A stretch of DNA of 64,000 nt from Dicyema japonicum. Lineage: Eukaryota > Animalia > Dicyemida. Shown in pieces: positions 11,578 to 60,395 of the stretch (position 1 is its first letter; every line of letters begins with the position of its first letter). The DNA lies in contig RDEW01000085.1 of assembly GCA_011109175.1 (NCBI GenBank), positions 45,975-109,974 of the forward strand, read 5' to 3'. The notes below the pieces were generated by a model. That model was not told the origin of the DNA. It did not search any database and worked only from the letters and a program-made list of their open reading frames with translations. The position numbers were made by a program, and so were the translations under genes.

Positions 11578-14233
11578 TTAAGGCATCTGAATGGCCATGC
11601 TATTTCCCCTAACAATAGCCAACGAGATACGTTCTCGGAACCAACCAGTCTCTCGCGGATCCTTGGTCACAGCTTGAATCATGGAGCCGATCTTACGAAC
11701 CAACTCATCTGCTTGGGGGCCAAGGATTCCTGACGTTTCCACCGCGAATGGAACAAAAAGATACTCCTCCGAAATTCTCTGGTACTTCCTCCTCTTTCGT
11801 TCTTCGGCCTGCTTTGAAGCATGTCCTGGGTCTGAAGCAGAAGCAACCAAATTAGACGGGGAATAAGTATCAACACACGTCGCGTCCCAGATCAGGTTTC
11901 GTCCGTTGGCGAATGGAAAAGTCGTCATCCCATCAGGACGTTTTCCATCGTTTCGGGAAAGACCAGCAGGTTCTAACAGGCAATGGTGTCCAGCAGAGGC
12001 AAGGGAATTTTTTAATGTCATGTTAAGATAGGAGTGCCTGGGGAAACGACCCGCACTCATCTTGCATGACAAGGGATGATAACCAAAAGGATCGATCCAA
12101 CGTCCACAGCGGCATTTTCTTTTGGCACACAATTTAAGACCAAGACGAAGCGAGGTAGCTATTCTTACAGCCTCATCATCCAACAGGTTTCCAATTTCGG
12201 CAGATGGATAAGCGTTTATCCAGGCCCCCGTCGAGTGACAACTGGCTGTTTTGAGGCAGGCAAGCCTTCTTACATCTTCCGTCTTTTCAAGGGACTCTTT
12301 CTTCTTTTCGAAGACACAAAACAAATAGGACTTTTGCTTATCACAATTGGCCGGAGCATTCAGGTACAAATTCATCCATTCATCCCAGGCTCCCGACGGC
12401 GTCAGCGGTACGTTTAGTCTGGAAGTAGAGTGAAGGACCGTATCCACTAAACGCCTTGACGAGCCGAACGAAGATAAATAGGCGCCCAAAGCAACGTCCG
12501 AAGGAAGAGAAAGACCCAAACCACCGCAGGCTACAGTGAGTGAGGCCTGTAACCATCCGAAATCATCGAAACGAACATTAAGAATGGACCCCATCGTTGA
12601 CCGGATATCCATATCAATTAACGTTTTAAGGTATTTTTCGGCGTAGCATGGGGATCCCCGTAAAATAAAAAGGAGTTTTGGAAGAAGGAGACAATTCTTC
12701 AGCATAAAAAAGGCGACATGACGGTACAAAAAACTCATCCTGTCGGCATACTGACGTAAATTAGTCCTCTTGCCTTCCAATAACTCCCTCACCCGGTTTA
12801 CCAAAATCCCACACCCGAGGAAGTCGAGAGAATCAATATGAGTCTCCCTAACCCCTGGGATGATATCGCTGAGTTTTCTATGAAAAAGGTAGAATGAATC
12901 GGAACTCAAATTCAGATTAATTGCTTCGCACTTTTCATTGTTAAAATCCAGACCGATTTTTCCACACAAACTTCTGATCGATGCAACTTTGGAGAGAATA
13001 TTATCGGGACTTCCACCGAGAATACAATCGTCTAGATACCAGACGTTTAGTGGAGTGCAACGGTCCGGGGCAATATGGTCGATAGACAAGGAAAATAGAA
13101 GAGGACCGAGTAGGTCCCCCTGTTGAACTCCGGATCCGAATGAAATAATTCCACTGCCAAAAACAAGAGGGGATGGATCCGAATACGCGAGATATACAAA
13201 GGGATAAATCTGAGGAATCCTCCTCCTACAGGTATCAAGGACGGTGTTCCTTCTGACTGAATTGAAGGCATTCCGGAGGTCCAATTTGAATAAAACTCTG
13301 TCCTCAACATTCAATTCAGCTGATTGTGACGCAAATTCTCTCACTGCGTGGATCCCAGCTTCACAGCCGCCATTGATTCCGACACAAGCTGCGAAGGACA
13401 AAATTCGGCTGAAATTCGGGAGATAACAAAACGACAAGCCATTTTTGCGGATAAACGTCGAAATACGTTTCCAATTGCAATGGGGTGAATACCACCATCT
13501 TTCTTTCCAAGGCCCGTTAGATTCGCCGAAAAGAGGAGATTCCGACCAAAATCAAAAACGTTTCCGGAAAGCATGCGAGCTACGAGATTCCGGGTTCGCT
13601 CCAAGAGTAGCGATCCAGGCCTGCTGATAGAATGGGACACCAAGTCTGACAGATGGCCAGATTTGAGAACGTCAACTCCTCCACTGCTACTTCTTCGGAA
13701 AGAACGAAGAGCGTTGTAAATGGCTGAAGTGGAAATATCATGCATAGATTGTTCTGGACGAACAGGTTTACAAAAGTCTTCTGGTTCTGGAGGATGTTTC
13801 TGTCCCAATATACAGAGTGTCTCCTGAGTGGCTTTCACCGGGAGCAGTAAGATCGTTCGTACTGCAGCAGTAAGATTGCCCTCCATCAATTTCCTCCTGA
13901 CACGAGAGCGAAGCCTCTCAGGAGCCATACTGGAGTGTTTGGAATTGGACTTTGGTAAGTAATCAACTGGGAAAACAAATAATTCTTCAGCCAGGGACTC
14001 CCAAGAGGGAAGTGATCGAGCAATTTTCTTGAATAGTTTTTCATAACCTATGTGGTGTGGTAGTAACCAACACATACAGAACATCGAATCCCGCACTTGC
14101 GAGAATTAGATACTCTGCACCCTTTGCATGAGGTGTCTTCGTGTAGTACATCATAAAAAACAGACATGAATAGATAATAGGAGAAAGAACTGTATATATA
14201 AACGACGACCGACGACAACAAATAATTCAACAA
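11578..14233 (-). mobile_element. Near-complete CRE-clade non-LTR retrotransposon (RT, zinc knuckle, RLE), frameshifted
   Basis: 619-aa ORF with KLDLRNAFNSVRR, GVQQGDLLGPLLF, WYLDD, CRCG..D..GYH.LSC, KRPDG..LIWDATC; upstream ORF 13341-14096 supplies LGKKDGGIHPIAIGNVFRRL; AT-rich tail after the stop. Confidence 0.9.
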
Positions 14234-15761: not shown

Positions 15762-16417
15762 ATGTCAAATTTCAAATGCTGCGGCACATTTTTGCGGGGC
15801 GTCTCTTTTGATAATGCACAGGTTCTTAGAAATACTGAATCCTCAATCGTTATATACGATAAACTACGGAATTCGAACATTAAACATGATTACCACAGAA
15901 AATATTACAAGAATATAAAAAACGACGGTCTCTTCAAAGTCCACTTCACTCTCCTATCAAAACGACTCAGTTTCGAGGATAAGTCGTACTTGTATCTTGC
16001 GAAAGAGTATTTCAAGGATACGGTTTGCTGAATTTTGACTTTCAGCTTCCCGGATTGTTGTGTGGGGAGGAGTTGTATGACAAATACACTGATGACATTA
16101 TTTTTGTTAACCATATTTGGAAGCCCTACAAAAAGAAGGGAAAGTCTGCCTATAAATGGGAGATATTCAAACTAAGGAAGATCCTGAAGCTGATTTTCAG
16201 TGAACGAAGGTTTGAAATCCTTCACATTGGGGTCACTGAGGAGACTGATACTATAAATGTACGTTGGCGAGTGAACGGAGTGTCACGTGCTGAAATTGTG
16301 ACCGCCAATCTGATTGGGAGGTCCCTTGACGGTTATTCTACGCTTTCCGTGAATAAGGAGGGTCTTTGTTATTACCATAAAGTGGATAAGGTGGAGTGTA
16401 ATGTAAATGGCAGATAA
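15762..16417 (+). CDS. C6orf136: C6orf136-like (DUF2358, NTF2/SnoaL-like) protein
   Basis: YTDDIIFVNHI..KGKSAY..FEILHI..TINVRWRV..DGYSTLSVNKEGLCYYHKVDKV resembles C6orf136; the two ORFs join in frame through a 23-nt GT-AG intron at 16023-16045. Confidence 0.75.
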
Positions 16418-19999: not shown

Positions 20000-21000
20000 T
20001 TTTACAAAAAGCAAGAAATTTCATGATGATCAACGACAAAATATATCTCAAAGATCCGAATGGAAATCAAGCTTGTGATTTGTATGGACAATGAGATGGA
20101 TGTTTTAACCTCAGCACTCCATAACCAGGCTCATCTTGGAATGAATAAAATAGAGGATCTCTGCAATAACACTACTTCCACATTAAAAGAAGTGTTATCC
20201 GCAGAGTAATTAATTTCTGTGAAATCTGTAAGTTTTCTACTATTTTAGAAGTTTGTTTTTTGGTAATATTTTAATAGATAAGTGATGAAGAACATCATAT
20301 CATTGCGCTAAAACCAAATGAAAGGTCTCAAATAGATATTATTGATCTGAAAATATTTTATTCTGTCAACGATGAATACAAATGGATGCTCACTGTAATT
20401 GATGTATATTCAAAGTTGGCCATAACAAGAAAATTAAAAAAACAAATCTGGTTTTGAAGTAAGATCCTTCAAATCGTATATTCAATTTAGGTTTCAATGG
20501 AATTAAAGAGCACATTCTATGAATATAGGCCTTGTATGATTTTACAATCAGACAATGGTACAGAATTTAAAAATTCTGATATTCAGGCACTTACTAATGA
20601 ATTTAATATTAAACAAGTTCACGGAAGACCAAACAATCCTTGTTCTCAAGGTCAGTTGCAGAATTTAAAAATTCTGATATTCAGGCACTTACTAATGAAT
20701 TTAATATTAAACAAGTTCACGGAAGACCAAACAATCCTCGTTCTCAAGGTCAGTTTTTTGTATTTATTTTTAAGGTATCATAGAACGATTCAATCAAACC
20801 ATCACACGGATTCTGTCAATAATGATGGCAAAAACGCTGAAAAATCTTGGATTCAAATATTACCTAGTGCCACTTATATACATTACATAACTGTTCATTC
20901 GTCGAGCGGACGAACACCTTTTGAGATGTATAGAGGCATTCCTGGTTTTAATACTGTTACAGTAAATGATGGTTGACTTAATTTTTAAAATTTTGACATA
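20000..21000 (+). mobile_element. Intron-containing DD35E integrase (Ginger/KRBA2-like)
   Basis: HHQAHLGMNK..CEIC zinc module, QIDIID, VIDVYSK, ILQSDNGTEF, SQGIIERFNQT, GRTPFE; 32-nt (20459-20490) and 26-nt (20749-20774) GT-AG introns restore homology; one polyA frameshift and one ~96-bp duplication. Confidence 0.85.
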
Positions 21001-22669: not shown

Positions 22670-24844
22670 AAGATCCTCAGGATCCTCATATACCGCTTTG
22701 TTTGCAATGCGGTACAATGTTTTCTAATGAGGCAATGAAACCATCGCGTTCAATCGAAAATTTAAAGCGAAAACATCCCAACTCAATTGAAAAAAAAACA
22801 GAAATTGTTTTTGAATTAAAAAAAGATTTATTAAAATAAAAACAGATATACATTTTATTAACATAACAAACTCGCTACTAATTAAAAACAGCTTAAACAG
22901 GGAGAAGCCAATGAGTTTGCCCTAGTTGATAGGGTCTAGTATAACAAGACACCATATGTGGCCTCTTCGAATTATTGACCCCTTCCACCATACAAGAATT
23001 ATTTTTTAAGTGGTGCAATATTTTTTCAATAGATCTTGAACGTCTTTCATAACTAGGCGGTAATTTAGATTTTAAATCAAGTCCATATGCCAGTTTAATA
23101 GCATATCTCCTCGATATATCGAGAAACTCTACAAGAATACTTCTCTCATCACATTCAAACCATCCTTGGAAGCCATAAATCAAGAGTGATTTTATACAAG
23201 CTATATAAACATAGATTAGTTTCTGGACTCAATTGAAAACGTAGAAGCGACTTCAGCATCGCGGTAGCTTTTTTCCTTTTTTTCTTGAAGTAATTTATAA
23301 AGGAATTCTTCGAGTTCACACAAACACCAAAATATTGCAACTGTTCCGTGTTTTTTATTGCTCCAATATTTATACAAATTTTTAATTTATTTTTGTAATT
23401 CACAATCTATGAAGCAGTACACTTTTCAAGAGGTAAGGATAAACCTTTATTTCGCCACCAACATTTAATTTTTTCGATATGGGTTGAAACGCGATTCCAG
23501 GAAATCGTTTTATTAATCCTTTGATCAAGCAGAAGTATATCATCAGCATAAATAAGCATTTTCGAATTTAAGTGTTCAACCTTCGGAATGTCACATATAA
23601 CACAATTAAGACAGACCCTTGTATTACCCCTCTTTTTAACCAAATTTTCTTCGATGTATGATTTCCAACACGTATAAAAGATTCTCTACCAGAAAGAAAT
23701 TCCTTCATCCACACTAGTGCCTTGCTCCCAACATTAACATTTGACAGAATCTTCAACAACCCAACATGCCAAACGCTATCAAAAGCCTTTGATATGTCTA
23801 GACATACGGCCGTAGACATTCCTCTTAGCAACATATATAAAATTTGATAACATTGAGAAACAATCTCCAGTCTCTCTAGTGAGGCAAAAACCCCACTGAT
23901 CATCGAGAAAAAATTTTTTATTTTCAATATACTTTGATAATCTGTTGAAAATAATTTTTCCATGTTTTTCGATATACTCCATATCAGGCTTATTGGCCTA
24001 TAGTTCTCTAGATTTAAACTAGATTTTCCCTTCTTCGGGATCATCCGTACAGAAGACTTTTTCCGCGCAGAAGGAACATCTCCAGAACACTACGAAAAAT
24101 TAAATAAAGCCCATAACGTTTTCAATAATGGAACTCCAGAATTTTTGAAGACAGTCAGGGGATAAAATCCCATCTCGGAGCTTTATTTAAGAAGTTAAAA
24201 TAAAATCACTTTAACTTCTTTTTTTAATAAAAGTATATTTCAAAATGTTACTGGACTATTTTATACATACAAAGTTGCAGAAATAATTGCAAAAACTGGC
24301 TATTTTATTTATTTTAATTTGTAGGTAATCCCCATTTGATAGCAATTCGCCCGTGTTTAGATTCATTTATTCACGATATTTTACAAAAAGATTCTTCAAA
24401 CATACTAAGATCATCCCCCTAAGCAATGACACAATAAAAAGAATTGATGAAATGTCTAATGACATTGAACAGTCTTTAATATTATCTCTCAGTTCTTGGG
24501 ATCTAAATTAGTGAAGATATAAGTCCGGAATTATGTGAAAAATGATTCCAATCATTTAATGTTTCCGACTTCATATTGCGTAGAAAGAAGAATTAGCACT
24601 CTCAACAATGTCATCGGGAAAAAACGAAACAAAATAAATGTACAAGAAAGAGGAGATATAAAAATTGCACTTACGAAAAGAAAGGAAAATTTAGAGAATC
24701 TTGTGAATACTCATCAACCACAAGGATCTCATTAAAACTATGATTTTGAAATAAAATTTAAGTACGTGGTAATAACTTTTTGTCTTGTGAAATAAAAAGA
24801 GAAAAAAATCGCGAGGGAGATAAAAAATTTTTTTGAGACCACTG
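22670..24844 (+). mobile_element. hAT Charlie/Buster element interrupted by a LINE
   Basis: N-terminal PLCLQCGTMFSNEAMKPSR at ~22700; YKVAEIIAKTG/NPHLIA and LSNDTIKRIDEMSNDIE at ~24270-24480; C-terminal FPTSYCVERRISTL..ERGDIKIALT..HQPQGSH; right terminus GAGACCACTG at 24844 followed by CTCTAGAA. Confidence 0.75.
22893..24060 (-). mobile_element. Degenerate LINE reverse transcriptase (Jockey/CR1-like)
   Basis: IPKKGK..NYRPISL, CLDISKAFDSVWHVGLL, GVIQGSVL, LIYADDILL spread over several frames. Confidence 0.85.
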
Positions 24845-40478: not shown

Positions 40479-41236
40479 ATGTGGGGCGATTCAGATTCCG
40501 ATGTTCCGACAATGAACAGTGTTTTTGCCGTCGATGATAGCTTCCATGTGGAAGAGGATCAACTGGAGTCGTTTATTCCAAGCAATGGATCTGAATTACT
40601 TGCTTTAATAAGGGCAGAAAGAAAGTTTGCTTAGCAATAATATATAGTTTCCTTCCAAAAGTCTCTATTGCTGCTTCTGGAAATCCAAAATCATCGATTC
40701 CAACTCATATGGATGAACCGAGTTTTGAATGTCCTAACAATTTCATCCCCTCAGACGAATTCCGTCGTAAACAAAACGAGATCTTCACCGAAATCCGCGA
40801 AAAGTTCGAGACCAATCGTTCTCTATTCAAACCGAGAAAATTAACCTTCAAAATCCCAAAGAACAAGACCATGTGGAAAGAGTGCCTGCTTTTGGCCTTT
40901 CAAGAAAGCACTCCTCAGCCTATCCTGAGTTTGATCTACAAATTACGTCAGAAGGATGTTTTCCTGGCATTGACTGCCATAAATGAGTGGCTTAGTGATA
41001 ACAAAATTACCCACGTGTGCGGAATGTGGGTTTATTGCCTTTTGATTTGTCCCACGTGGCCAATTTACCCTGATTTGCACTCTTTGCTTAGAGATATCGC
41101 TCGTAAACTAATATTAGAAAGAAAAGAGCTGAGTCACGTGTCTGATTTTAGTGATACAGAGAGATTGAACCGAATTAATCTTTTTTTAGTCATTATTTGT
41201 GATTACTTTGGGCAATCTGATTTGCTTTTATTGTAA
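40479..41236 (+). CDS. GEMIN2: Gem-associated protein 2 (SMN complex)
   Basis: PQPILSLI..WVYCLL..P..PDLHSLLRDIAR..NLFLVIICDYFGQSDL matches the Gemin2 C-terminus; N-terminal exon joins through a 23-nt intron. Confidence 0.85.
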
Positions 41237-42049: not shown

Positions 42050-43070
42050 AGGGTACGGCTTTCCTGTATAGACGACGATCATCTTTCACTAGAGTTTGAA
42101 GAGGTGAGCGTTCAACTACAACACATTTGACTTCACTGTCTCAATTTATATCAGAATGGTTCAATGAACCGAAACGCCGTCTACGGACAATATTGGTTTC
42201 CCTGGACAACCAGAAAGCATTCGATTCTGTCCCGAGAACATTACTCACGAAAAAGGTTTTTGACACCATCATTCAGCCGGCTTTGAAAAGATGGATAGCC
42301 AATTTTCTTTCCGGAGAAAAAGGACATTTATGTATAGGCCACGCAAGATCGAGGTCCCGTATTCTACCAAATTGCTTCCCTCATGGATCACCCCTCTCTC
42401 CGGCGTTATTCAATTTATTCCTAAACGATTTACCCTGCCTTGGAGGACCAGATTCAATGCTTCTCGCATATGCTAACGACCTCATTATCGCTAGCAGGAA
42501 CAAATACGCGGATATGAGCTTCAGTCACATATTGACGACCTGGGAGCCTGGTTGAATTTTAATCGTCTCTCCATATCCAGGGATAAATCATCGTATACTA
42601 TCTTCACTACAGACAGAGAAGAAAAATATACACTGGATTTGAGCATATATGGAGACTCTTTACCTTTACAGATTCATCTAACTATTCTGGGAGTGACTTT
42701 CTAACCTTTGATGACATTTTCTCAACATGTGAAGAACGTTATGACAAAGGGTTTCAGGAAACTGAATATAATGAAACCGCTCTTAAAGTCCAGGCCGTCA
42801 CGGGAATGCGCTGTCGTCTTGTACTATGACCCACATCATTCTTATAATGTGACCAAACAGTTTCCAGTACGTCTTCATGATCAGAGTAGTTAGAGGTGCC
42901 TTCCCCAATCGGATTCCTCTGCAGAGATGAGAGAAGGCTATTTCGTACGGTATTGGGAACAATGGGAAACCACAGACTTCTGATTACGGGAACTGGGATT
43001 ACTTAACTGTCTAACGTTTCTTTTTTCTTTCTCGGTGATCCCGGGGTTCTAAATAAATAAATTCAAATTT
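42050..43070 (+). mobile_element. 5'-truncated LINE (Jockey/I-like RT and 3' end)
   Basis: LDNQKAFDSVP, HGSPLSPALFNLFLNDLP, LAYANDL, TILGVTF..MTFSQHV; ends GGGGTTCTAAATAAATAAA. Confidence 0.85.
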
Positions 43071-47158: not shown

Positions 47159-49679
47159 ATGTTTATTTTACTTTTATTGGCGTTATCATTGTTTTTTATG
47201 CCCGCAGAAATCCATTGTGATAAGACTACATAAACGTTAGTGATGACGGTGGGAACTTATTGCCAGGAATGTATGCAGTGATTTTGTTGATTGACCTATC
47301 GATTTCCTATGGTACCCCATGTTATGATTTTTGATTGCATGAAATATGTCAATTGGTTTAAATATATGAAACATTTGGGAAATAAACATAGACCTATCTA
47401 TAACTGCGGAGATGTGAAATCCATTGACGATGATTATAAGGGTGCCACGTGGGTTGGAAAATTTATGATTGGAAATGCCAGCATATGGTATGACCATCTC
47501 CATAATGACGAATTTCTCTACAACCAGTCCTTATACTCTGATTACGGGACCAGGTAGGGGTTTTCGATAAAAGTGCAGAAATAAGCCGATAACAAAATGC
47601 TGCAAGTACTTTGTTGTTGATGACACAATCCGTTGTACAGAAAACTGTTCATCCCCCGCCGACGGATACTTGATTTCAAAGTCGCAGAAAAAACATGATA
47701 CTTCAAATTGTGACAAAGTGGCTTCTTTTTGCAAAAACGTAAAATATATCGACGTGGGGACGACATTAAAGTGCAATAGGAAGAAAATAGATGAGAATTA
47801 TCACGTGCGATGTGATTACGACTACTCCCGGAGAAAACAGATGATATTTTTCAAAGGAAATGCCACAAGCGTAAAGATTTGACTAAATCCAGAAGATCGA
47901 TCAAATTTCAACATTTTTAGACTCGCTTGACTCGGTGACGTCGGAAATGAATTTGTCGAAGAGTTTGGTTAGTGTTTGTCTGAGAATTAGAACATTTTGA
48001 GTAAACTCGATAATGTCGTCGAGTATTCCACTGAAAACTTGACTTTTACAGAAATCACGGATATCAACATAAAGTTTTAATTTTTAAAATCCAGATTTAT
48101 TAAAAATGTTCCAAAAATACTGAATTTGGCGTCCAACATTAGTGAGGTTGTTAAATACAGTTTTTCAAACTTTGACGTCCACTTGGAATATGTGGAGTCG
48201 AATTTGCACGATTTCTCCAATAACCAGACTAGGATAACCTTTTCCGGTGGTGATGTCGCAAGACTTTTACGTTTATTTTCCGTTATTTCAGAAAACGGAG
48301 ATTTCAAGCTATCAGTCGTGTTCTGGCGAAACGAAAAACTGTTCTCCCAATTTGACAATTTTACCATTCTCACTCCCATTTTGGGGGTCTCAATCAATAA
48401 TACACGGATAACCGATTTCAGATCAACCATTGTATTCCCTCAGAGTAAGCATGTGTTTGATATTTTAGATTACTCTTCTGAGGCCACGTGTGTGTATTTA
48501 AACCTGACAACGCGACTCTGGGAGACCAACGGATGCAAAACTCTGCGGGCTGGAGATCACGTGGCCTGTGAATGTTCCCATTTGACAAACTTTGCCGTCA
48601 TCTTTGTTGGCTTTTGTCTCTTACTGACTAGGATCCGAGTTTAGTCAACGAGACACCTCGGTGGATTACTGCCTTCACCAACGTCGGTCTCGGGATCTCC
48701 CTTTTATTGGAATTCTTGACAATCATCTTTTCCATCTCACATTGGTCGTAAGAAACTTGAAATTCTGAGTATTTTAGAAAAGGGAAAAAGTCTCATTCCT
48801 TCAAAACCTTCCTGAATTTGTGTGCGGCAGTATTCTCCATGAATATGATCTTTGCTTTCGGGTTGGGATATGGAATAGGAAATATTTGCGGTCTCGTAGG
48901 ATTCCTCCTTCACTTTACCTTCCTGGCTGTCATCGCCTGGATGTTAGTGGAAGGGGTTCTCTTTTACTACTTATTTATTAACGTCCTAACTAGAATTCCA
49001 GAAAATTTCTCAAAAATCTCATTTTGGACAGCTTGGAGTACATTTTAGTACATTTTAGTTCTACCGCTTATTCCACCTTGCATTATTTCCGCCATCAACT
49101 GGAAACTCTATTTGCAGAAAAATATGTTTTTTTAATAATTTACCTTAAGATGCTGGCTCAGCGGAGTCTCCCTGTACGTCAGATTCTATCTCCCAGTCGG
49201 AGTCTGCTTATTTACTAATCTTATCATCTTTGTTATGATCCTGAAGTCTTTGTATAATGGCTACAAGAAAAATCCGAATTATTTCCGTAGGGAATCAACT
49301 AAGGTTAAAAAATACTTTATGATTGTCGGTCTCATCTTTCTGTTTGGTATTCGTTCCGTTTCACCAATAGGATTCACGTGGTCCTTTGGATTTCTGTTCA
49401 AATTTAGCCATTCCATCTTTATTCAGTTTCTCTTTGCTCTTTTCAACGCCTTCTTTGGATTATACATATTTCTCGTGCGGTACGGATTCTTGGTGATTTC
49501 ACGATACTTTTAAATTATTGATATTAGATATTTATATTTAATTACTTTTTTGATTTTATTTAGGCCTTCTGTATAGGGTTATAGTTACGAAATTTTCCGG
49601 GGACTTAAAGACAAGGCAGAAGCGTGTCGTCAGAGATTGTCTCTCGATAGAAAAATGGTTCTCTTTCCAGGTGTACTAA
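47159..49679 (+). CDS. Adhesion GPCR (signal peptide, ectodomain, GAIN/GPS, 7TM secretin-type)
   Basis: MFILLLLALSLFFMPAEIHC at 47159; GPS CVYLNLTTRLWETNGC..ACECSHLTNFAVIF; TM segments CGLVGFLLHFTFLAVIAWMLVEGVLFY, GFTWSFGFL, LFALFNAFFGLYIF; exon boundaries of the ectodomain not resolved. Confidence 0.88.
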
Positions 49680-52500: not shown

Positions 52501-53485
52501 NNNNNNNNNNNNNNNNNNNNNNNNNNNNNNNNNNNNNNNNNNNNNNNNNNNNNNNNNNNNNNNNNNNNNNNNNNNNNNNNNNNNNNNNNNNNNNNNNNNN
52601 NNNNNNNNNNNNNNNNNNNNNNNNNNNNNNNNNNNNNNNNNNNNNNNNNNNNNNNNNNNNNNNNNNNNNNNNNNNNNNNNNNNNNNNNNNNNNNNNNNNN
52701 NNNNNNNNNNNNNNNNNNNNNNNNNNNNNNNNNNNNNNNNNNNNNNNNNNNNNNNNNNNNNNNNNNNNNNNNNNNNNNNNNNNNNNNNNNNNNNNNNNNN
52801 NNNNNNNNNNNNNNNNNNNNNNNNNNNNNNNNNNNNNNNNNNNNNNNNNNNNNNNNNNNNNNNNNNNNNNNNNNNNNNNNNNNNNNNNNNNNNNNNNNNN
52901 NNNNNNNNNNNNNNNNNNNNNNNNNNNNNNNNNNNNNNNNNNNNNNNNNNNNNNNNNNNNNNNNNNNNNNNNNNNNNNNNNNNNNNNNNNNNNNNNNNNN
53001 NNNNNNNNNNNNNNNNNNNNNNNNNNNNNNNNNNNNNNNNNNNNNNNNNNNNNNNNNNNNNNNNNNNNNNNNNNNNNNNNNNNNNNNNNNNNNNNNNNNN
53101 NNNNNNNNNNNNNNNNNNNNNNNNNNNNNNNNNNNNNNNNNNNNNNNNNNNNNNNNNNNNNNNNNNNNNNNNNNNNNNNNNNNNNNNNNNNNNNNNNNNN
53201 NNNNNNNNNNNNNNNNNNNNNNNNNNNNNNNNNNNNNNNNNNNNNNNNNNNNNNNNNNNNNNNNNNNNNNNNNNNNNNNNNNNNNNNNNNNNNNNNNNNN
53301 NNNNNNNNNNNNNNNNNNNNNNNNNNNNNNNNNNNNNNNNNNNNNNNNNNNNNNNNNNNNNNNNNNNNNNNNNNNNNNNNNNNNNNNNNNNNNNNNNNNN
53401 NNNNNNNNNNNNNNNNNNNNNNNNNNNNNNNNNNNNNNNNNNNNNNNNNNNNNNNNNNNNNNNNNNNNNNNNNNNNNNNNNNNNN
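52501..53485. other. Assembly gap (N run)
   Basis: Run of N. Confidence 1.
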
Positions 53486-54499
53486 TGAGTAAAAGAATTA
53501 AAGAAAATCAAGGGTATTAAGAGAACAGTCAAAAGTAAAATTAACGAAATCAACGTTGACCATCAGAGTCAGTCCCCTAAATTATAATTGAAAAATTACC
53601 CACGAGGGATAAATACTCTTCCTAAATTATAAAATAATGAATACTAACATAAAATCATCTGTCAAAACCTGATTGCAGACTTCCCCACGTTTATGCCATT
53701 CCCCCAGAGGACAACAATACATTTCGTCGAGATTGCAGTTTTGATTAGCGTCAGATTTAATTGGAGGTTGAACCTAACTATGAAACCACAAAACAACCAT
53801 TTCTAAAAATATTGATAATCACGATCGTAGTTGTATTATATATTATATTTAACGGGGAATAAAAATTGAATAGTCTCGGATAATTACTCTGTCTGGTTAA
53901 ATTGTAGAAAGATGAGGCGAGGAATTTCCTCTATCTGTACTTAGCTTAATGATTGACGGAAGCCTTTTTCTTCTTTATTCTTGTGAGGAAGGACGAGAGG
54001 AAGTACTAAAAAAACTTTGGAAATCCTAAGCTTAGAACAAATGAAGTGTCGGATACACGTGGGATTCGTTTTCAAATCTCGCTCTATCAGAGGATCATGT
54101 ATTAGAAGCTGCACGTGTAAAATGCTAGTTGATGTGATTCAGTAAAATCGCTGACTCCCAAATTTATTCCTTCTCGCTTCATCTGAAAGAAACGTGTAGA
54201 TAAATGGAACGTAACTGCTAAATGAGAATTTCTTCGGACATAGGTGTGATGACATATAAAGATGTAGCCCTAATTGCAAATAATAAAGGGGACATTTGAA
54301 AATAACTCAGTGAATGAGGATAACTAAATTTATGTTATGTTATCCAAATTAAGTCGTGTTCGACCATTGGAGATCTAATGAGTCAATTTTCTCCACTATT
54401 TCCTATCCGTCGCAATTTGTAGTAGCCTTGATATATGCATTCCCGTGATGTCTTCTACCGTGGATAGCCACCGAGTCTTCGGTCGATTAGGTCTTCTAT

Positions 54500-54850
54500 T
54501 TCCAGTAATATTGCTCAGCATAATGGTTCATTCCAGGGAATCAGAGCGGACAACATGACAAAAGACACCAATCTGTGTTTTACGATTCTTCCTTTTAGCG
54601 AATGTCCGTCTCCACCCGTTTGAGTATATCCGTGTTTGTTATTTTGGAAGTCCAAGGGATTCTTAGTAAACTCCTCCAGCACCAAAGTTCAAAAGCATCA
54701 ATTTTTCGTCTATCCGCCATTTTCAGTATCCGTGAGTCTCCGCCGTATATAATAACTAAATTTATCTTTCGTTTATTAATTATCTCATTGGTTTCTCACA
54801 TAAAACTTGAAAATATCATTTTAATTACATTTTCCATGTTTATAGTTAGT
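54500..54850 (-). mobile_element. RTE-clade LINE C-terminal remnant
   Basis: ADRRKIDAFELWCWRSLLRIPWT..TNTDIL. Confidence 0.8.
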
Positions 54851-55470
54851 TAAGTCTTCATACCTGCAACACAGCGGTCAGTTTCTTATGTTGACCCAAG
54901 GATTTTATCCGGAGAACCAAGGATGAATCCTAGTTGCATTACCAGGAGCAAAAGTACCTCTTGGAGGAAACCTTCGAGTGACTATTTTTGGAGGTACATC
55001 AAGTGCTTAGAGGCTTTATTTTTTTATTTTATAAACTCCGAAATCACGATAAAGAAAATAAAAGTTATCGTCCAATTAAGTGATCCCGGTGTTCATACCA
55101 GTCCTTTTCCTGCGGTTAGTTTTGGAGTCCTGGATAAATCTCCACAGCGGGAAAGGTTTCTTCTCATATCTCGTGAAGGCATTCATATATAGTCTGATAT
55201 GCGGTCCGATTTTCTACTCCAATTTTCTTTTGGATCCTCGTGGTTACTAGGTCCACTTGATGGGTAAATGTGAGTAAGGGATCCAGGATAATTCCAAGGA
55301 TTAAAAGGGTCTTCTTAATGGGAAGCGGGGATTCACACAATGTTATTCGTGGTGTTTCCCTGTAATTCTTTTCGTGTTGAGGTAAGCGTCATTGCAAGTA
55401 GAGGCTTTATGGAACAATAATTGGGCTAAACAGAATCAACAAAGTAAAAAATTCAAACTTTACAATAATT

Positions 55471-57552
55471 TTATAAATAAAATAGTTTATGTTGTAAATC
55501 TGTATGAAAGTCCTCCATTAAATATTTTCCAGACATGCTCGCCAATTTATGAGCTAACATGGAGACAGAAGGTATGGTGCACATCTGAACATATAACAAG
55601 TCATTAATACAGAAAATGTAGGGTACGTCTTAGTGAAGGCATAAGATAGATGATGACACAAATCAGGAGATAACATAGCCTCGTTATGCAAGACGTTATA
55701 ATAGGGAAACAAGTGGGAAGAGTGACTGTCCTCAAAGTCACACGAAGACAAATAAAAGTCAAATCTACAAAAAGAACCCTCCATCACCTCCCAACACGTG
55801 TCAATCCAGAGTCAATCACAGTCCCACATAGTTTATTCACCTGTGAAAAGAAAATGTTACTCACACGTTTGTTCACTACAACAAACATCAATTTAGGCGC
55901 CAATTTTCGGTTACTTTAAACAATCACAGACAAATCAACCCCCAAGGACAAATTTCCTCACAGGCACATTTCACAGCCTCCAAAGCTTGGTTGACCTCAA
56001 CATCCCTCACAGTCCTCAGCATATCATCAGAAATCCCATCTCTATATATGATCAAATTCCCAGGGAGTCTCCCATTGAAGCGATACCACCTCCTCAAGCC
56101 AACTAAGAATATGTTAACAAAGTAACCCAAAATATGACGGAACAAGTGGTTATTTATTTCTTGCCCAGTCTCTACAAACTCAATCTGATTGTGCACGTGG
56201 CCATCTAGTCCCAAAGTAGACACAACGGCGGTAACACTGCGGAGAGATAACTCGTAGTGATGGAACGTGTCCATTCCAACAATCATGGAGTCTTCCAATA
56301 TGTTCAAACCACGTGTTATTGAATGAGGAATTGTAACACCAGTCTTTATCCGCCCACATTTAGCGAGAATCTGCCTGGTGAGAGTTTCCAAAATGGAGTC
56401 ATTACACAATGCCAGGTGGATAGTTCTCAGCCGCACAATCTGAGTACTGACTAAACATAACTACCAAATCTACCCCCCATAGCCACAGATGCTTCCCATT
56501 TTAACTCACAGTAGCCATTGTCGCTATATTTGGGGATCACAATAAGGTAAATGTCCGCAGGGGAAGAAGATCGAAGGGCAGAGATGCACTTGCTAATCTT
56601 GACCTCGTCCACGTCAACCCTGCAAGTTACCCCAACCCATACAAGGCCACTCGTTCGATATTGCAGTCAAACTTCGACAACGAATAATCAGACAAAGCAG
56701 CAGAGAACGAAATGATGTCTTCTATCCAGTCCTCGTGGTATATGAAGGCACATTTGACAGTAGTTCCACAGGACGACTAAAAATTAAGAAAGAAGTAACT
56801 GTTTTTGACGATACCTTGATTTTCCTGCATTTTACGGAATCTGGGTTTTCCACAGAGATATACCACATGTCAAACAGCTCAGAACCATGAAAATAACGAA
56901 AGTAAAAGTCCTCAATCATTTTCGACTTTTCATTCACTCCCAATTTGGTCCCTGAGCAGTCGTTTAGGTACCGTTCTAAATCACCCCCAGTATAGTTATC
57001 TGTAAATGACTGTAACTTCAGCTTCAAAGTACCATTCGCCAGATATTTCAGTTTGGGGGAAAACACCAGGTAGTAACAGTCGTCTCCCCCACGTATTCCA
57101 ACAGTCATCCCCGTGTATTGTTTAGTTCTAGACTGGAAAACCATTGACCAACTCTGCATCCACGTGATCCGGGAACGCGTAGTAGAATTCATTCACTATC
57201 GCTGTTAGACCACGTGATTGGAGATATCTATAATCACTAAAGAAAGAGTAACTGCTTAATATAGTATGAAAGGAAGTAAATGACAAAAGAACTGTCTTCA
57301 GACACACACCGAGGGTTTGAGAATAGGCCTCTGAGGTCGGTCTACAATAAGAGCACGTGCTACTGGCAGATCCTGACATTTCGTGAAACCAAACTGAAAT
57401 CCATCGTACAAAAAATTCTGTAAATTACTGCTAACATGTGAATCTCCGAGTTTCTCGTGGACATATAAACTCCATTTTGGTTGTAGGGATACAAAGTAAG
57501 CATTTGTAGTGATACTTAAGGGCTGACCTTTGTCCCCTGTTCTGATTTGCAA
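55471..57552 (-). CDS. piwi: Piwi-clade Argonaute, divergent, apparently lacking PAZ
   Basis: N: GDKGQPLSITTN..PKWSLY; MID: YCELK..STQIV..LAKCG; PIWI: MIVGMDTFH, GQEI, IIYRDGISD, VNKRV, GTVID, DFYL, LAHKLA, C-terminal LFYL-stop (Piwi type); introns of 23-38 nt; start codon unresolved. Confidence 0.92.
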
Positions 57553-58079
57553 TTATTTACCTTTTTTGGGTTCTATTTGGAGATTAATAGGCGCAAGTGT
57601 ACTCTTTATATAATTTAATTTAATGTTTGGAGTCTTGCAGTATAATCTTTTAATGATCATTTATAACAGTCATTCGGTAGTCTGTTTCAATATTTTTTGA
57701 ATTTCATTTATTATTTTTAGTTAATAATTTAAACATTAATTAAATATTTTAAAATAAATAATTAACTAATCGAATAAAACGATGCAAGCTTGTCTTCAAC
57801 AAGTTGAATTAACATTGGATATGTCTAACGACTATGTCTGTAAAGAGAACAAGGCCGCGTGGCGACATGTGGTACTTCGTGGCTAATTTTTAGTTAATAA
57901 TTTAAACATTAATTAAATATTTTAAAATAAATAATTAACTAATCGAATAAAACGATGCAAGCTTGTCTTCAACAAGTTGAATTAACATTGGATATGTCTA
58001 ACGACTATGTCTGTAAAGAGAACAAGGCCGCGTGGCGACATGTGGTGCTTCGTGGATAATTAGTCGAAGTTTATGATTG

Positions 58080-58335: not shown

Positions 58336-59371
58336 TTAATGAATAAATATGTCTAACGAATCTACCTGCCGATATGTGTGGTCACAAAACAAGTCGTTTC
58401 TTCCATTCAAGACTAGAAGCCTCAAATACACGTAAATTAAGAAAAAAACCCACCCCTCTTCAAATTTTAATGAAAAGTGATCGTCGTCGATACAGGAAAG
58501 CCGTGGGTACTCTGGATGAACATAAGAAAAACCTTTCAATTTTTTGAAGCGTAACGGGATCACTTAATTGGTTGGTTTACTCCTTTCTTGGTGTTTCCTT
58601 TTTTGGGTTATTAAATAAAATAAATGAACTATGCGGGTAGTGCTTTGGCTTGTGTAGTATTTACCTGTGAGTTAGATTCCCACATCGCTACCTACTTGGT
58701 CGAAGGATTTTTTCAGCTCTTTCCCCCTAAAAATTCTAGAAGCGTCTTTGGATCCACCTTATTCTAGAAGACACTCAATGCCCCCGAGGATTTAGATAGA
58801 ATCCCTTTCTTCTCTACTCCAGTGAAGGTTGGAAAGGTAGAGATACATACTTCTCTTACTAAAACCTCCTTCAAGTATATCCTGGGTTATTATAGAAAGT
58901 ACGCTTCCTAGACCGCCTTCAATTTATTCTTCGCATCAGATCCACATGAATGATCTCTAGGAACCGTTAAGTTCTTGTTAGCCACTGTTTTTCTCCAACA
59001 CCGGTACTTTAACTTGCGAAAAAATAATACATTTGTATGCCATAAAAACCAACTGTATCCCCCAAAAACACAAATTAATATGCCTACTCCATTCTCTTCA
59101 CGTATCTTCGCATCGACCCCTTAGCGAAAATCAACGCCCTAGGAAGGAGTGCCGGAAACGACATTGCCAAAGAATCTAATATTGGTCAAAAAATATGCAA
59201 GTAGAAAAATTACAAATAAAAGTGAAGTTATTAGCGGAAATCATTTTTGAGCCGATTTAAACCACGTGAATAAATTGGATTCATTTCTACTATAAAAAAC
59301 AAGCAGAAACCTCAGCTTAATACACTGGGATCCATCATTTTTAATGTTATTCACTAGAGTACTCACGGAAA

Positions 59372-60395
59372 TCATTTCTGAGCCGATTTAAACCACGTGA
59401 ATAAATTGGATTCATTTCTACTATAAAAAACAAGCAGAAACCTCAGCTTAATACACTGGGATCCATCATTTTTAATGTTATTCACTAGAGTACTCACCGG
59501 GCTATAGGACAATCTGTATTCATTATTAAGCAAGTCGTCAACATTCTGATGAATAAACGACACCAAACCGATTTGTCCCACGTAACAGTTAGCCAGTCGT
59601 CGGCCTTATCAGGAGTGAGGAGCGCCTAAGTAAAAACAAGCGACAAACAGGCATTCTGCTGTGTACTCCCCTCATATCTCCATTGGCATCCGTTGTTACA
59701 ATCGATAAATATTTTGTTTTCCCTCCAAGAACGAGCCCAGCCATCAAAAGAATGGGCCACGTAGGAGATTCAAAGTCGGTGGAGTAGTCTTGAAACAAAT
59801 ACGGTAGCTTTCCACCTGCAGTTGTTTTCCATTCATAAAATCTGAAATTAACCACGTGGAATCACCCATCAACAACAGCGATACATCGTCCAGGAATATC
59901 AAACTCACGTGTACTGAATTTTTCAAGCAAAGTCTCCTTTCTATAATTAATGCGGAGAGGCTGACTACTGGACTCTTTACATCCTCCCCAACTTTAGTTA
60001 ATAACGGTACTAATACTTCATATAAGCATCGTCCAGGAATATCAAACTCACGTGTACTGAATCTTTCAAGCAAAGTCTCCTTTCTATAATTAATGCGGAG
60101 AGGCTGACTACTGGACTCTTTACATCCTCCCCAACTTTAGTTAATAACGGTACTAATACTTCATATAAGTGAGAACATGCGCTGAATTCTCAGAGATGAT
60201 AACTGGACTAGGAAATTGATAATAATTATTTACACGGAAGAGTAGGGTCCGACGTTGTAACTCCTTTTGAAGGATTTGTTCTGAACAGTTGGGTTTAATT
60301 TGATCTTTGATTTCAAATTTTCAATGATTTCTTCAGGGGATGACAAACTTACAATACAATCGCAAAAATCACAACCAAAGAATTCTACCACACAT
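59372..60395 (-). CDS. HMCES: HMCES / SRAP-domain abasic-site processing protein
   Basis: Starts MCGR (Cys2); SYNVGP, WG, INYRKETL, GRCIAVVDGFYEW, LPY, MAG, SIVT, HSRMPV, PVSTLVNNIKN; two tandem duplications inside. Confidence 0.9.

What the first reader, a model, noticed from the sequence alone, without database searches (positions are those of the whole stretch)
55471..57552. Piwi-clade Argonaute that appears to have lost its entire PAZ domain but keeps the 5'-phosphate pocket and catalytic residues
Seen: one uninterrupted exon (~57105-56815) reads YTGMTVGIRGGDDCYYLVFSPKLKYLANGTL-KLKLQSFTDNYTGGDLERYLNDCSG-TKLGVNEKSKMIEDF..ELFDMWYISVENPDSVKCRKI. By eye the first block matches the Piwi L1 linker (WPGFTTSI..DVSHKVLRSETV) and the last matches L2 (TRLTPEQR..ELRDWGLSF..SGRIL). 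Only 29 codons (57036-56949) lie between them, where Piwi proteins normally have the PAZ domain (on the order of 110-130 aa). The MID Y-K-Q-K residues, PIWI D-E-D-H and C-terminal LFYL are present. The Q..G(S/T)..PT.Y motif is altered (SCDFEDSHSSHLFPYY). Known: PAZ anchors the guide 3' end, including the 2'-O-methyl end of piRNAs; PAZ-less Argonautes are known mainly from prokaryotes and trypanosomatid Piwi-like proteins. Inference: a compact (~600 aa) animal Piwi that may use unusual guides or trimming, or act as a slicer without 3' anchoring, in a transposon-rich genome.
Basis: partly seen in the sequence, partly recalled or inferred. Interest (0 to 1): 0.85.

Follow-up and report, generated by a model that had tools for sequence, protein, structure and literature searches.

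The report
Piwi gene lacking its PAZ domain
This is an intact Piwi-family gene, kept by natural selection in a tiny-intron parasite genome (probably a dicyemid), that still has the parts that hold a small guide RNA's 5' end and cut targets but has lost the PAZ domain that normally clamps the guide's 3' end, which has not been described for an animal Piwi.

Summary
On the minus strand, 57660-55471, ten exons joined by nine GT-AG introns of 23-38 nt give an uninterrupted 651-codon frame. Residues 296-651 match a Piwi profile (E 5.7e-54). The closest solved structures are PIWIL2, PIWIL1 and Siwi. The MID pocket (Y338, K342, Q354, Q377, K381), the catalytic D411/E448/D488/H626 and the C-terminal LFYL are all present.

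No PAZ is detectable. Pfam finds none, and a PAZ profile finds nothing in the protein or in any frame of the 64-kb window. The N-domain and L2 anchor motifs lie 128 residues closer together than in a canonical Piwi. The stretch where PAZ should sit is one continuous exon (57127-56815).

DNA contigs from a second sample, 1.3% divergent, run colinear through that exon and most of the gene with no gaps, so this is not an assembly collapse. Their differences are 19 synonymous to 10 conservative replacements (pN/pS 0.14, P=5e-6), so this is not a pseudogene.

Still open: no RNA evidence was obtained. A vestigial PAZ remnant cannot be excluded, because the spliced protein could not be folded. Guide binding and slicing without 3' anchoring are inferred, not shown. 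Verdict: a new variant of a known kind.

The parts
55471..57660 (-). Whole coding region of the Piwi gene: ATG at 57660, TAA stop at 55473-55471; 10 exons, 651 codons.
   Evidence: Spliced model gives 1956 nt with no internal stop. An in-frame stop lies directly upstream of the ATG.
57561..57660 (-). Exon 1 (residues 1-33). K/I-rich, no RG motifs, no homology; the least certain exon.
   Evidence: It is the only in-frame ATG upstream of the N-domain motif.
57357..57536 (-). Exon 2 (residues 34-93), with the N-domain start motif GDKGQPLSITTNAYFVSLQPKWSLY.
   Evidence: Weak profile match at residues 36-59, E 0.023 for one target.
57153..57330 (-). Exon 3 (residues 94-153), the end of the N domain (YRYLQSRGLTAIVNEFYY resembles the Piwi '...RR.l..l.l.qiGRnYY').
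   Evidence: An enumeration of stop-free splice paths found this as a stop-free path using 26-nt and 25-nt introns, the size class of the homology-supported introns. Other stop-free paths with 31-47-nt introns exist, and this one was chosen by intron size and N-domain resemblance. Resemblance is from MAFFT only.
56815..57127 (-). Exon 4 (residues 154-257): a single exon spanning the place where L1, PAZ and L2 lie in other Piwis. Residues 147-196 (57172-56998) are all that stands where about 165 residues of L1+PAZ are expected.
   Evidence: Colinear with no gaps in independent DNA contigs. No Pfam or PDB match.
56815..56997 (-). L2-like part (residues 197-257), including ELFDMWYISVENPDSVKCRKIK, which matches the Piwi 'eL..WGLs....p..v.gR.l' motif.
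   Evidence: Sub-profile hit at residues 237-259, E 0.14 for one target. MAFFT alignment.
56302..56776 (-). MID domain (about residues 258-400; exons 5, 6 and the start of exon 7), with the 5'-phosphate pocket residues Y338 (56513-56511), K342 (56501-56499), Q354 (56442-56440), Q377 (56373-56371) and K381 (56361-56359).
55474..56301 (-). PIWI domain (residues 401-651), with D411 (56271-56269), E448 (56160-56158), D488 (56040-56038), H626 (55551-55549) and the C-terminal LFYL (55485-55474).
   Evidence: Pfam PF02171. Piwi profile E 5.7e-54. PDB PIWIL2 7yfx E 1.7e-9. Conserved columns.
55698..55745 (-). Altered motif SCDFEDSHSSHLFPYY (residues 570-585), in place of the Piwi 'SQ.v.qGT..PTHY'. The near-invariant G, T and H are lost, acidic residues are gained, and there is a 2-residue insertion.
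57537..57560 (-). Intron 1, 24 nt, GT-AG.
57331..57356 (-). Intron 2, 26 nt, GT-AG.
57128..57152 (-). Intron 3, 25 nt, GT-AG.
56777..56814 (-). Intron 4, 38 nt, GT-AG.
56620..56642 (-). Intron 5, 23 nt, GT-AG. The junction lies inside the continuous Piwi profile alignment.
56451..56473 (-). Intron 6, 23 nt, GT-AG. The junction lies inside the continuous Piwi profile alignment.
55914..55939 (-). Intron 7, 26 nt, GT-AG. The junction lies inside the Piwi profile alignment.
55765..55787 (-). Intron 8, 23 nt, GT-AG. The junction lies inside the Piwi profile alignment.
55585..55610 (-). Intron 9, 26 nt, GT-AG. The junction lies inside the Piwi profile alignment.

Best explanation
This is a real, intact, selectively maintained gene for a very fast-evolving PIWI-clade Argonaute that has lost its PAZ domain. 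The genome has introns of about 25 nt. By GC content, gap rate, repeat load and intron size it is most likely the dicyemid Dicyema japonicum or a close relative; that identification is inference. Shown here: ten exons and nine GT-AG introns of 23-38 nt give a 651-residue protein. Its MID and PIWI domains are complete, with the 5'-phosphate pocket, the D-E-D-H slicer tetrad and the Piwi-type C-terminus. The segment between the N domain and L2 is about 130 residues too short and has no PAZ signature. The gene is under purifying selection. Inferred: the protein anchors a 5'-phosphorylated small guide in the MID-PIWI pocket and can slice complementary RNA, but it cannot clamp the guide's 3' end or read a 2'-O-methyl end. 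The 3' end would then be free, so guide length and stability would be set by something other than the MID-to-PAZ span. The protein also has no N-terminal arginine-glycine motifs, so it probably does not dock Tudor proteins. It would therefore be a stripped-down Piwi, probably one paralogue of a small Piwi-only Argonaute repertoire acting on the abundant retrotransposons.
For: Gene structure: a 1956-nt frame with no stop and introns of 23-38 nt. Junctions 5-9 lie inside one continuous Piwi profile alignment. Family: Pfam Piwi E 1.1e-14; Piwi profile E 5.7e-54 over residues 296-651; best PDB matches PIWIL2, PIWIL1 and Siwi, with no AGO1-4 chain listed; it falls on the Piwi side of a tree, away from two Ago-like sequences; it ends in LFYL, as most Piwi-type hits do. 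Function-bearing residues: 37 of 48 near-invariant MID-PIWI columns are kept, including Y338, K342, Q354, Q377, K381, D411, D488 and H626, and E448. PAZ loss: no Pfam PAZ. A PAZ HMM gives no hit in the model or in any frame of the 64-kb window, best E 1.8. Only 4 of 21 PAZ-region invariant columns are matched. L1 and PAZ sub-profiles give no hit, and the N and L2 anchor motifs lie 201 residues apart against 329 in a canonical Piwi. 393 profile columns correspond to 236 residues. Not an assembly artefact: contigs from another sample cover 55595-57770 with 0 gaps, and the nearest assembly gaps are at 53485 and 61416. Not a pseudogene: against that sample there are 19 synonymous and 10 conservative nonsynonymous differences, pN/pS 0.14, with 7.8 synonymous expected under neutrality for the same mutation spectrum, P=5e-6. 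No stop is created and no splice dinucleotide is hit. Context: window GC is 36.3% and N content 3.8%, against 36.7% and 4.1% for D. japonicum, which also has 49% repeats with LINEs and very short introns (PMC6736024; PMC13644364). D. japonicum is tabulated with 4 Piwi-like and 0 Ago-like genes (PMC12147562, Supplementary Table 2).
Against: No transcript evidence. All four runs laid behaved like DNA: they were colinear with the genome and showed no splice joints. Exons 1-3 rest on open frame, intron-size logic and weak motif matches only. The N-terminal half is not significantly alignable to Piwi profiles (hhalign probability 1.6%), so a reduced, unrecognisable PAZ remnant cannot be ruled out from sequence. 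The spliced protein could not be folded, and the exon folded alone gave pLDDT 53. 11 of 48 invariant MID-PIWI positions are changed, including the 'QGT..PTHY' stretch, which has turned acidic, so canonical guide-backbone contacts may be altered. The terminal branch is about 4 times the median. The organism's name was not given by any tool.
Confidence: 0.68

Rival explanations
1. A reduced or highly diverged PAZ remnant survives in residues about 147-196. This would resemble the PAZ* of long-B prokaryotic Argonautes, which keep the first subdomain but lack the pocket. It might still contact the guide's 3' part, so the protein would be 'PAZ-reduced' rather than PAZ-less.
For: MAFFT and hhalign both place TKQYTGMTVGIRGGDDCYY on the first PAZ strands ('liG.iVlTrYNNktYr') and LVFSPKLKYLANG on the last PAZ strand ('LIPELCyLTG'). 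Reduced PAZ* variants exist and can still touch the 3' end in MpAgo (bioRxiv 10.1101/366930).
Against: Only about 50 residues are available, where the Pfam PAZ model has 123 positions. The PAZ HMM gives no hit at any threshold. Among the P0004 PAZ positions, Y317 and N318 (the 'YNN' motif) are substituted, and F337, F347, Y350, Y351, Q364 and P365 fall in gaps. The alignment itself is not significant.
Confidence: 0.14
2. The protein is maintained but no longer works as a small-RNA-guided slicer. It would be a PIWI-fold scaffold or RNA-binding protein with another role, like the PAZ-less PIWI-like protein of Leishmania.
For: Extreme divergence: terminal branch 3.29 against a median of 0.84. The 'QGT..PTHY' stretch is lost and replaced by an acidic sequence, 11 of 48 invariant MID-PIWI positions are changed, and there are no N-terminal RG motifs. 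The Leishmania PAZ-less PIWI-like protein is mitochondrial and not linked to small RNAs (PMC3528672).
Against: All five 5'-pocket residues, all four catalytic residues and the C-terminal LFYL are retained despite that divergence. That pattern is hard to explain unless guide binding and cleavage are what selection maintains.
Confidence: 0.13
3. It is a decaying or untranscribed gene copy, or a gene-model or assembly artefact. On this view the PAZ exon was lost by a recent deletion or by assembly collapse, and a functional PAZ-bearing paralogue does the work.
For: No RNA evidence was obtained. The gene sits among transposon remnants, with a tandem duplication directly upstream. The scan noted another Piwi fragment elsewhere in this genome. 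D. japonicum is reported to have 4 Piwi-like genes.
Against: A 651-codon frame is kept across nine splice junctions. The same structure, with 0 gaps, is seen in contigs from a 1.3%-divergent sample. Synonymous changes are in strong excess, P=5e-6, with no stop or splice-site hit. No assembly gap lies within 1.9 kb.
Confidence: 0.05

Closest known systems
Canonical animal PIWI proteins (mouse PIWIL2/MILI, PDB 7yfx; PIWIL1; silkworm Siwi, PDB 5guh)
   Same: Same clade by best PDB matches, profile score, tree position and C-terminal LFYL. Same MID 5'-phosphate pocket and D-E-D-H slicer tetrad.
   Different: No PAZ domain and no detectable L1. No N-terminal RG-rich tail. N domain and L2 are shortened, giving 651 aa against about 830-880. 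The 'QGT..PTHY' stretch is replaced. There is an extra 8 residues after the glutamate finger. Only 34-38% identity even in the best-conserved exon.
Trypanosomatid PIWI-like proteins lacking PAZ (Leishmania PIWI, PMC3528672)
   Same: A eukaryotic Argonaute-family protein with a PIWI domain but no PAZ, in a parasite.
   Different: Those are protist proteins outside the animal Piwi clade, mitochondrial and not tied to small RNAs. This one is an animal PIWI-clade member that keeps the pocket and the catalytic residues.
Prokaryotic Argonautes without a full PAZ: short pAgos, truncated long pAgos such as AfAgo, and long-B PAZ* forms such as RsAgo (bioRxiv 10.1101/366930; PMC4919518)
   Same: They show that MID-PIWI can hold a guide and a guide-target duplex with no PAZ pocket, and that PAZ has been lost repeatedly and independently.
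   Different: Short and long-B pAgos are catalytically inactive and work with partner effector or APAZ proteins. Here the tetrad is intact, an N-domain motif remains, and no partner gene is visible in the window.
Engineered PAZ-deleted human AGO2 (Gu et al. 2012, Curr Biol; seen only as a citation in PMC5084781; the paper itself is not held)
   Same: An Argonaute with PAZ removed. By its title, PAZ is needed for slicing-independent RISC activation. This fits the idea that a slicing-competent protein loaded with single-stranded guides could do without PAZ.
   Different: That is an artificial construct of an Ago-clade protein. I could not read its results here, so what it shows is taken from memory and from the title only.

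Membership tests
PIWI-clade Argonaute | PIWI (RNase H-like) domain | tested here: met
   Pfam PF02171 E 1.1e-14 on exon 7, with weaker hits on exons 8 and 9. Piwi profile E 5.7e-54 over residues 296-651.
PIWI-clade Argonaute | MID domain with 5'-phosphate pocket (Y, K, Q, Q, K) and a C-terminal carboxylate motif | tested here: met
   Y338, K342, Q354, Q377 and K381 sit in columns invariant in 12 of 12 Piwis. C-terminus is LFYL.
PIWI-clade Argonaute | Catalytic D-E-D-H tetrad | tested here: met
   D411, D488 and H626 sit in invariant columns. E448 aligns with the 'GQE' glutamate of all Piwis and of MILI.
PIWI-clade Argonaute | Closer to Piwi than to the Ago clade | tested here: met
   PDB hits are PIWIL2, PIWIL1 and Siwi; the only other hit is QDE-2 at E 0.008. 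The tree separates it from the Ago-like pair by a 100/99 branch, but its position within Piwis is unresolved and its branch is very long.
PIWI-clade Argonaute | PAZ domain between L1 and L2 that binds the guide 3' end | tested here: not met
   No Pfam PAZ. PAZ HMM gives no hit in the model or the window. 17 of 21 invariant PAZ-region columns are gapped or substituted. The flanking anchor motifs are 128 residues closer together. By this feature it is an atypical member.
PIWI-clade Argonaute | N-terminal arginine-glycine (sDMA) motifs for Tudor docking | tested here: not met
   The 35 residues before the N-domain motif hold one R and one G, and no RG or GR pair. An unseen upstream exon cannot be excluded.
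PIWI-clade Argonaute | Binds piRNAs; expressed in germline or stem cells | not testable with these tools
   No RNA run could be laid. The runs found behaved like DNA.
Short or PAZ-less Argonautes (short pAgo; trypanosomatid PIWI-like) | Only MID+PIWI (no N domain), catalytically inactive, works with a partner protein | tested here: not met
   An N-domain start motif is present, though weakly matched. The tetrad is intact. No partner gene or further Piwi or PAZ fragment is in the window. It resembles them only in lacking PAZ.

The most novel reading that the evidence does not exclude
This is a naturally PAZ-less, slicing-competent PIWI-clade protein in an animal whose Argonaute repertoire appears to be Piwi-only. 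It would silence transposons with guides whose 3' ends are neither clamped nor read for 2'-O-methylation. Guide length, trimming and stability would then follow rules different from every known piRNA pathway. It would also define the smallest working animal Piwi (651 aa).
Probability: 0.35. Interest if true: 0.8.

Novelty: new variant of a known kind. Interest (0 to 1): 0.62.

Why it matters
In all described animal piRNA pathways, the PAZ domain holds the guide's 2'-O-methylated 3' end. This sets mature piRNA length through trimming and protects the guide. A Piwi that selection has kept for its 5' pocket and slicer site while discarding PAZ would be a natural experiment on what PAZ is actually needed for. 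It would connect animal Piwis to the repeated PAZ losses seen in prokaryotic Argonautes. It would also bear on how a drastically reduced parasite with 49% repeats, few Tudor genes and no Ago-clade protein controls its transposons. In practical terms, it flags a gene that domain-based censuses requiring both Piwi and PAZ would miss.

Tried and rejected
1. My first splice model used 14-, 16- and 27-nt 'introns'. It broke the frame after residue 312. I replaced it after enumerating stop-free splice paths.
2. RNA evidence was not obtained. Both run searches returned the same runs.
3. A representative search with the best-conserved exon found no relative above 38% identity. There is therefore no orthologue or annotated copy to borrow as a reference.
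4. The spliced 651-aa protein has no reference. It was therefore not handed to the folding, homology or atlas tools; that step was left out.
5. AlphaFold on exon 4 alone gave pLDDT 53 and pTM 0.35, which is unusable, so no fold search was run.
6. An ESM Atlas search with exon 4 gave best score 0.72, which is noise.
7. hhalign of the N-terminal 300 residues against 12 Piwis gave probability 1.6%, so the N/L1/L2 assignment rests on two weak anchor motifs.
8. I searched the whole window for a hidden PAZ exon or a second Piwi fragment and found none.
9. No tool named the organism. A myxobolid myxozoan, the other animal group with introns under 30 nt, was considered. It is less likely because Henneguya has 29% GC against 36.3% here.
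10. Dicyemid papers were searched for Piwi or Argonaute. They give no description, only a count of 4 Piwi-like and 0 Ago-like genes.
Full report
WHAT IS THERE. On the minus strand between 57660 and 55471, the three reading frames hold Piwi-like peptide blocks separated by very short GT...AG stretches. My first splice model broke the frame. After enumerating stop-free splice paths, a model with nine GT-AG introns of 24, 26, 25, 38, 23, 23, 26, 23 and 26 nt gives one uninterrupted frame of 651 codons, from an ATG preceded by an in-frame stop to a TAA. Junctions 5-9 lie inside a single continuous alignment to a Piwi profile, so these ultra-short introns are supported by homology. Introns 1-3 rest on frame, size class and weak motifs.

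SOURCE ORGANISM. Introns under 30 nt are known in animals only from myxobolid myxozoans and the dicyemid Dicyema japonicum (PMC13644364). The window has 36.3% GC and 3.8% N, and it carries several reverse-transcriptase fragments. D. japonicum has 36.7% GC, a 4.1% gap rate and 49% repeats with LINEs (PMC6736024), whereas Henneguya has 29% GC. I therefore take the source to be D. japonicum or a near relative. This is inference; no tool named the organism.

FAMILY. Pfam finds the Piwi domain on exon 7 (E 1.1e-14), with weaker hits on exons 8 and 9. A profile built from five full-length Piwis matches residues 296-651 at E 5.7e-54. Against the PDB, the best-conserved exon hits PIWIL2 (7yfx, E 1.7e-9), PIWIL1 and Siwi. 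The only other hit is QDE-2 at E 0.008, and no AGO1-4 chain is listed. In a maximum-likelihood tree the protein sits on the Piwi side, separated from two Ago-like sequences by a 100/99 branch. Its terminal branch is 3.29 substitutions per site against a median of 0.84, and its position among Piwis is unresolved. A scan of 1.84 billion representative proteins gave nothing better than 38% identity and E 5e-7. The protein is therefore extremely diverged, and neither it nor an orthologue is in the public protein collections searched.

WHAT IS KEPT. Twelve diverse Piwis share 48 near-invariant columns in MID-PIWI, and 37 are kept here. The kept set includes the 5'-phosphate pocket (Y338, K342, Q354, Q377, K381), three of the four catalytic residues (D411, D488, H626) and the C-terminal leucines. 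The fourth catalytic residue, E448, aligns with the 'GQE' glutamate of every Piwi and of MILI. The C-terminus is LFYL, like the L-[FY]-[FY]-L ending of most Piwi-type hits. Changed positions include the 'SQ.v.qGT..PTHY' stretch, which here reads SCDFEDSHSSHLFPYY (residues 570-585), and an 8-residue insertion after the glutamate finger.

WHAT IS MISSING. None of the N-terminal open reading frames has any Pfam match. A PAZ HMM built from nine Piwi/Ago homologues gives no hit at all in the model, and nothing better than E 1.8 in any of the six frames of the whole 64-kb window. A full Piwi HMM finds no other Piwi fragment in the window. Between the N-domain start and MID, 393 profile columns correspond to only 236 residues. 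Sub-profiles give weak hits for the N-domain start (residues 36-59, E 0.023) and the L2 'WGLs' motif (residues 237-259, E 0.14), and none for L1 or PAZ. The two anchors are 201 residues apart, against 329 in a canonical Piwi. The difference of 128 is about the size of the Pfam PAZ model (123 positions). Of the 21 near-invariant columns between P0004 positions 310 and 408 (its Pfam PAZ is 285-417), 10 fall in gaps and 7 are substituted, including the 'YNN' and 'YY' aromatic positions. The stretch where PAZ belongs lies in one exon (57127-56815), and no intron in the gene exceeds 38 nt, so no cassette exon is hiding there.

The label 'L1' for YTGMTVGI... is not secure. MAFFT and hhalign prefer to place that block on the first PAZ strands, and LVFSPKLKYLANG on the last PAZ strand ('LIPELCyLTG'). 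None of these alignments is significant (hhalign probability 1.6%). The safe statement is that about 50 residues (147-196) stand where about 165 residues of L1 plus PAZ are expected. They may be L1, a fused L1/PAZ-end strand, or a vestige of the first PAZ subdomain.

IS IT REAL AND IN USE? DNA-like contigs of three runs from a different sample cover 55595-57770 with no gap and about 30 substitutions. The short L1-L2 region is therefore reproduced independently and is not an assembly collapse. The nearest assembly gaps are at 53485 and 61416. In my frame, the 29 coding differences are 19 synonymous and 10 conservative replacements, giving pN/pS 0.14. Keeping the observed mutation spectrum, neutrality predicts 7.8 synonymous changes, and P(19 or more) is 5e-6. 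No difference creates a stop or touches a splice dinucleotide. Exon 4 alone has 5 synonymous to 3 replacement changes, which is suggestive only. Purifying selection on the protein argues strongly against a pseudogene and implies that the gene is expressed. No transcript evidence was obtained, however: the runs showed no splice joints, and the run tools are exhausted.

HOW IT PROBABLY WORKS. This section is inference from what is established for Argonautes. The retained pocket, C-terminal carboxylate motif and tetrad are the parts that bind a 5'-phosphorylated guide and cleave a paired target. PAZ holds the 3' end, which in Piwis is the 2'-O-methylated end, until pairing extends. Without PAZ the 3' end should be free, so guide length would not be set by the MID-to-PAZ span and the 3' end would be less protected. 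Piwis are loaded with single-stranded precursors, so the duplex-unwinding role that the title of Gu et al. 2012 assigns to PAZ (citation seen; paper not held) may be dispensable. Prokaryotic Argonautes show that this is workable. PAZ has been lost repeatedly among long pAgos, AfAgo still binds guide-target duplexes, and PAZ* forms lack the pocket. The absence of N-terminal RG motifs suggests no Tudor docking. This fits the very small Tudor set tabulated for D. japonicum, which is also listed with 4 Piwi-like and 0 Ago-like genes (PMC12147562, Supplementary Table 2). This gene is then probably one diverged paralogue in a Piwi-only repertoire. The acidic replacement of the 'QGT..PTHY' stretch is a warning that guide-backbone contacts may differ, or that the protein has moved to another role, as the PAZ-less Leishmania PIWI-like protein has (PMC3528672).

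COMPARISON AND NOVELTY. The protein passes every PIWI-clade test except PAZ and the RG tail. It resembles short or truncated pAgos and trypanosomatid PIWI-like proteins only in lacking PAZ. In the literature searched, PAZ-less Argonaute-family proteins are prokaryotic or protist, and no animal Piwi of this kind turned up. Dicyemid genome papers do not discuss Piwi. I rate it a new variant of a known kind. The two earlier scan notes on the same genome (a Piwi fragment; a TDRD12 gene) are unchecked leads that fit a retained piRNA pathway.

LIMITS. The full spliced protein could not be given to the folding or homology tools because it has no reference. Exon 4 folded alone was unusable (pLDDT 53). 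Transcription, small-RNA binding, slicing, and whether the paralogues have PAZ all remain to be tested.

Noticed in passing
window 57713-58061: Perfect-looking tandem duplication (173 bp x 2, 98% match) starting 53 nt upstream of the Piwi ATG. Each copy carries the same 34-codon ORF. It may have disturbed or created the promoter region.
   Followed up: partly
window 56103-56138 (minus strand): An in-frame 36-nt GT...AG stretch lies inside exon 7, just after the glutamate finger, where the protein has about 8 extra residues (FRHILGYF) relative to other Piwis. It could be a tenth, in-frame intron; only RNA data can tell.
   Followed up: partly
window 54396-54720 (minus strand): Short ORFs just downstream of the Piwi gene read like the C-terminal tail of a LINE reverse transcriptase (…IDAFELWCWRSLLRIPWTSKITN…), so the gene is flanked by a retrotransposon remnant. 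Judged by eye, not run against a profile.
   Followed up: no
window 11578-14096, 23568-24044, 42127-42555 and 20497-20976: Reverse-transcriptase ORFs and fragments (Pfam RVT_1, E 5e-10 to 7e-15; one ORF of 619 aa) and an integrase-core fragment (rve, E 1e-5). The window is transposon-rich.
   Followed up: partly
window 40709-41236 (+): Single-ORF match to Gemin2/SIP1, an SMN-complex protein (Pfam PF04938, E 2.2e-24, profile positions 53-215 of 215). It looks like a host gene whose first exon lies upstream.
   Followed up: partly
window 48126-48644 (+): ORF with a GPS autoproteolysis motif (Pfam PF01825, E 1.3e-11), i.e. part of an adhesion-GPCR-like gene. This supports an animal origin of the window.
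   Followed up: partly
window 16025-16417 (+): ORF matching DUF2358 (E 1e-13), a conserved protein of unknown function.
   Followed up: no
window 59235-59497: A second tandem duplication (131 bp x 2, 99% match) about 1.6 kb upstream of the Piwi gene.
   Followed up: no
window 55370-57770 against runs X1-X3: The second sample differs from the window by about 1.3% overall, and by about 4.5% at synonymous sites of the Piwi gene. That is more than at the introns and flanks (about 2%). The two samples may be distinct populations or cryptic species.
   Followed up: partly
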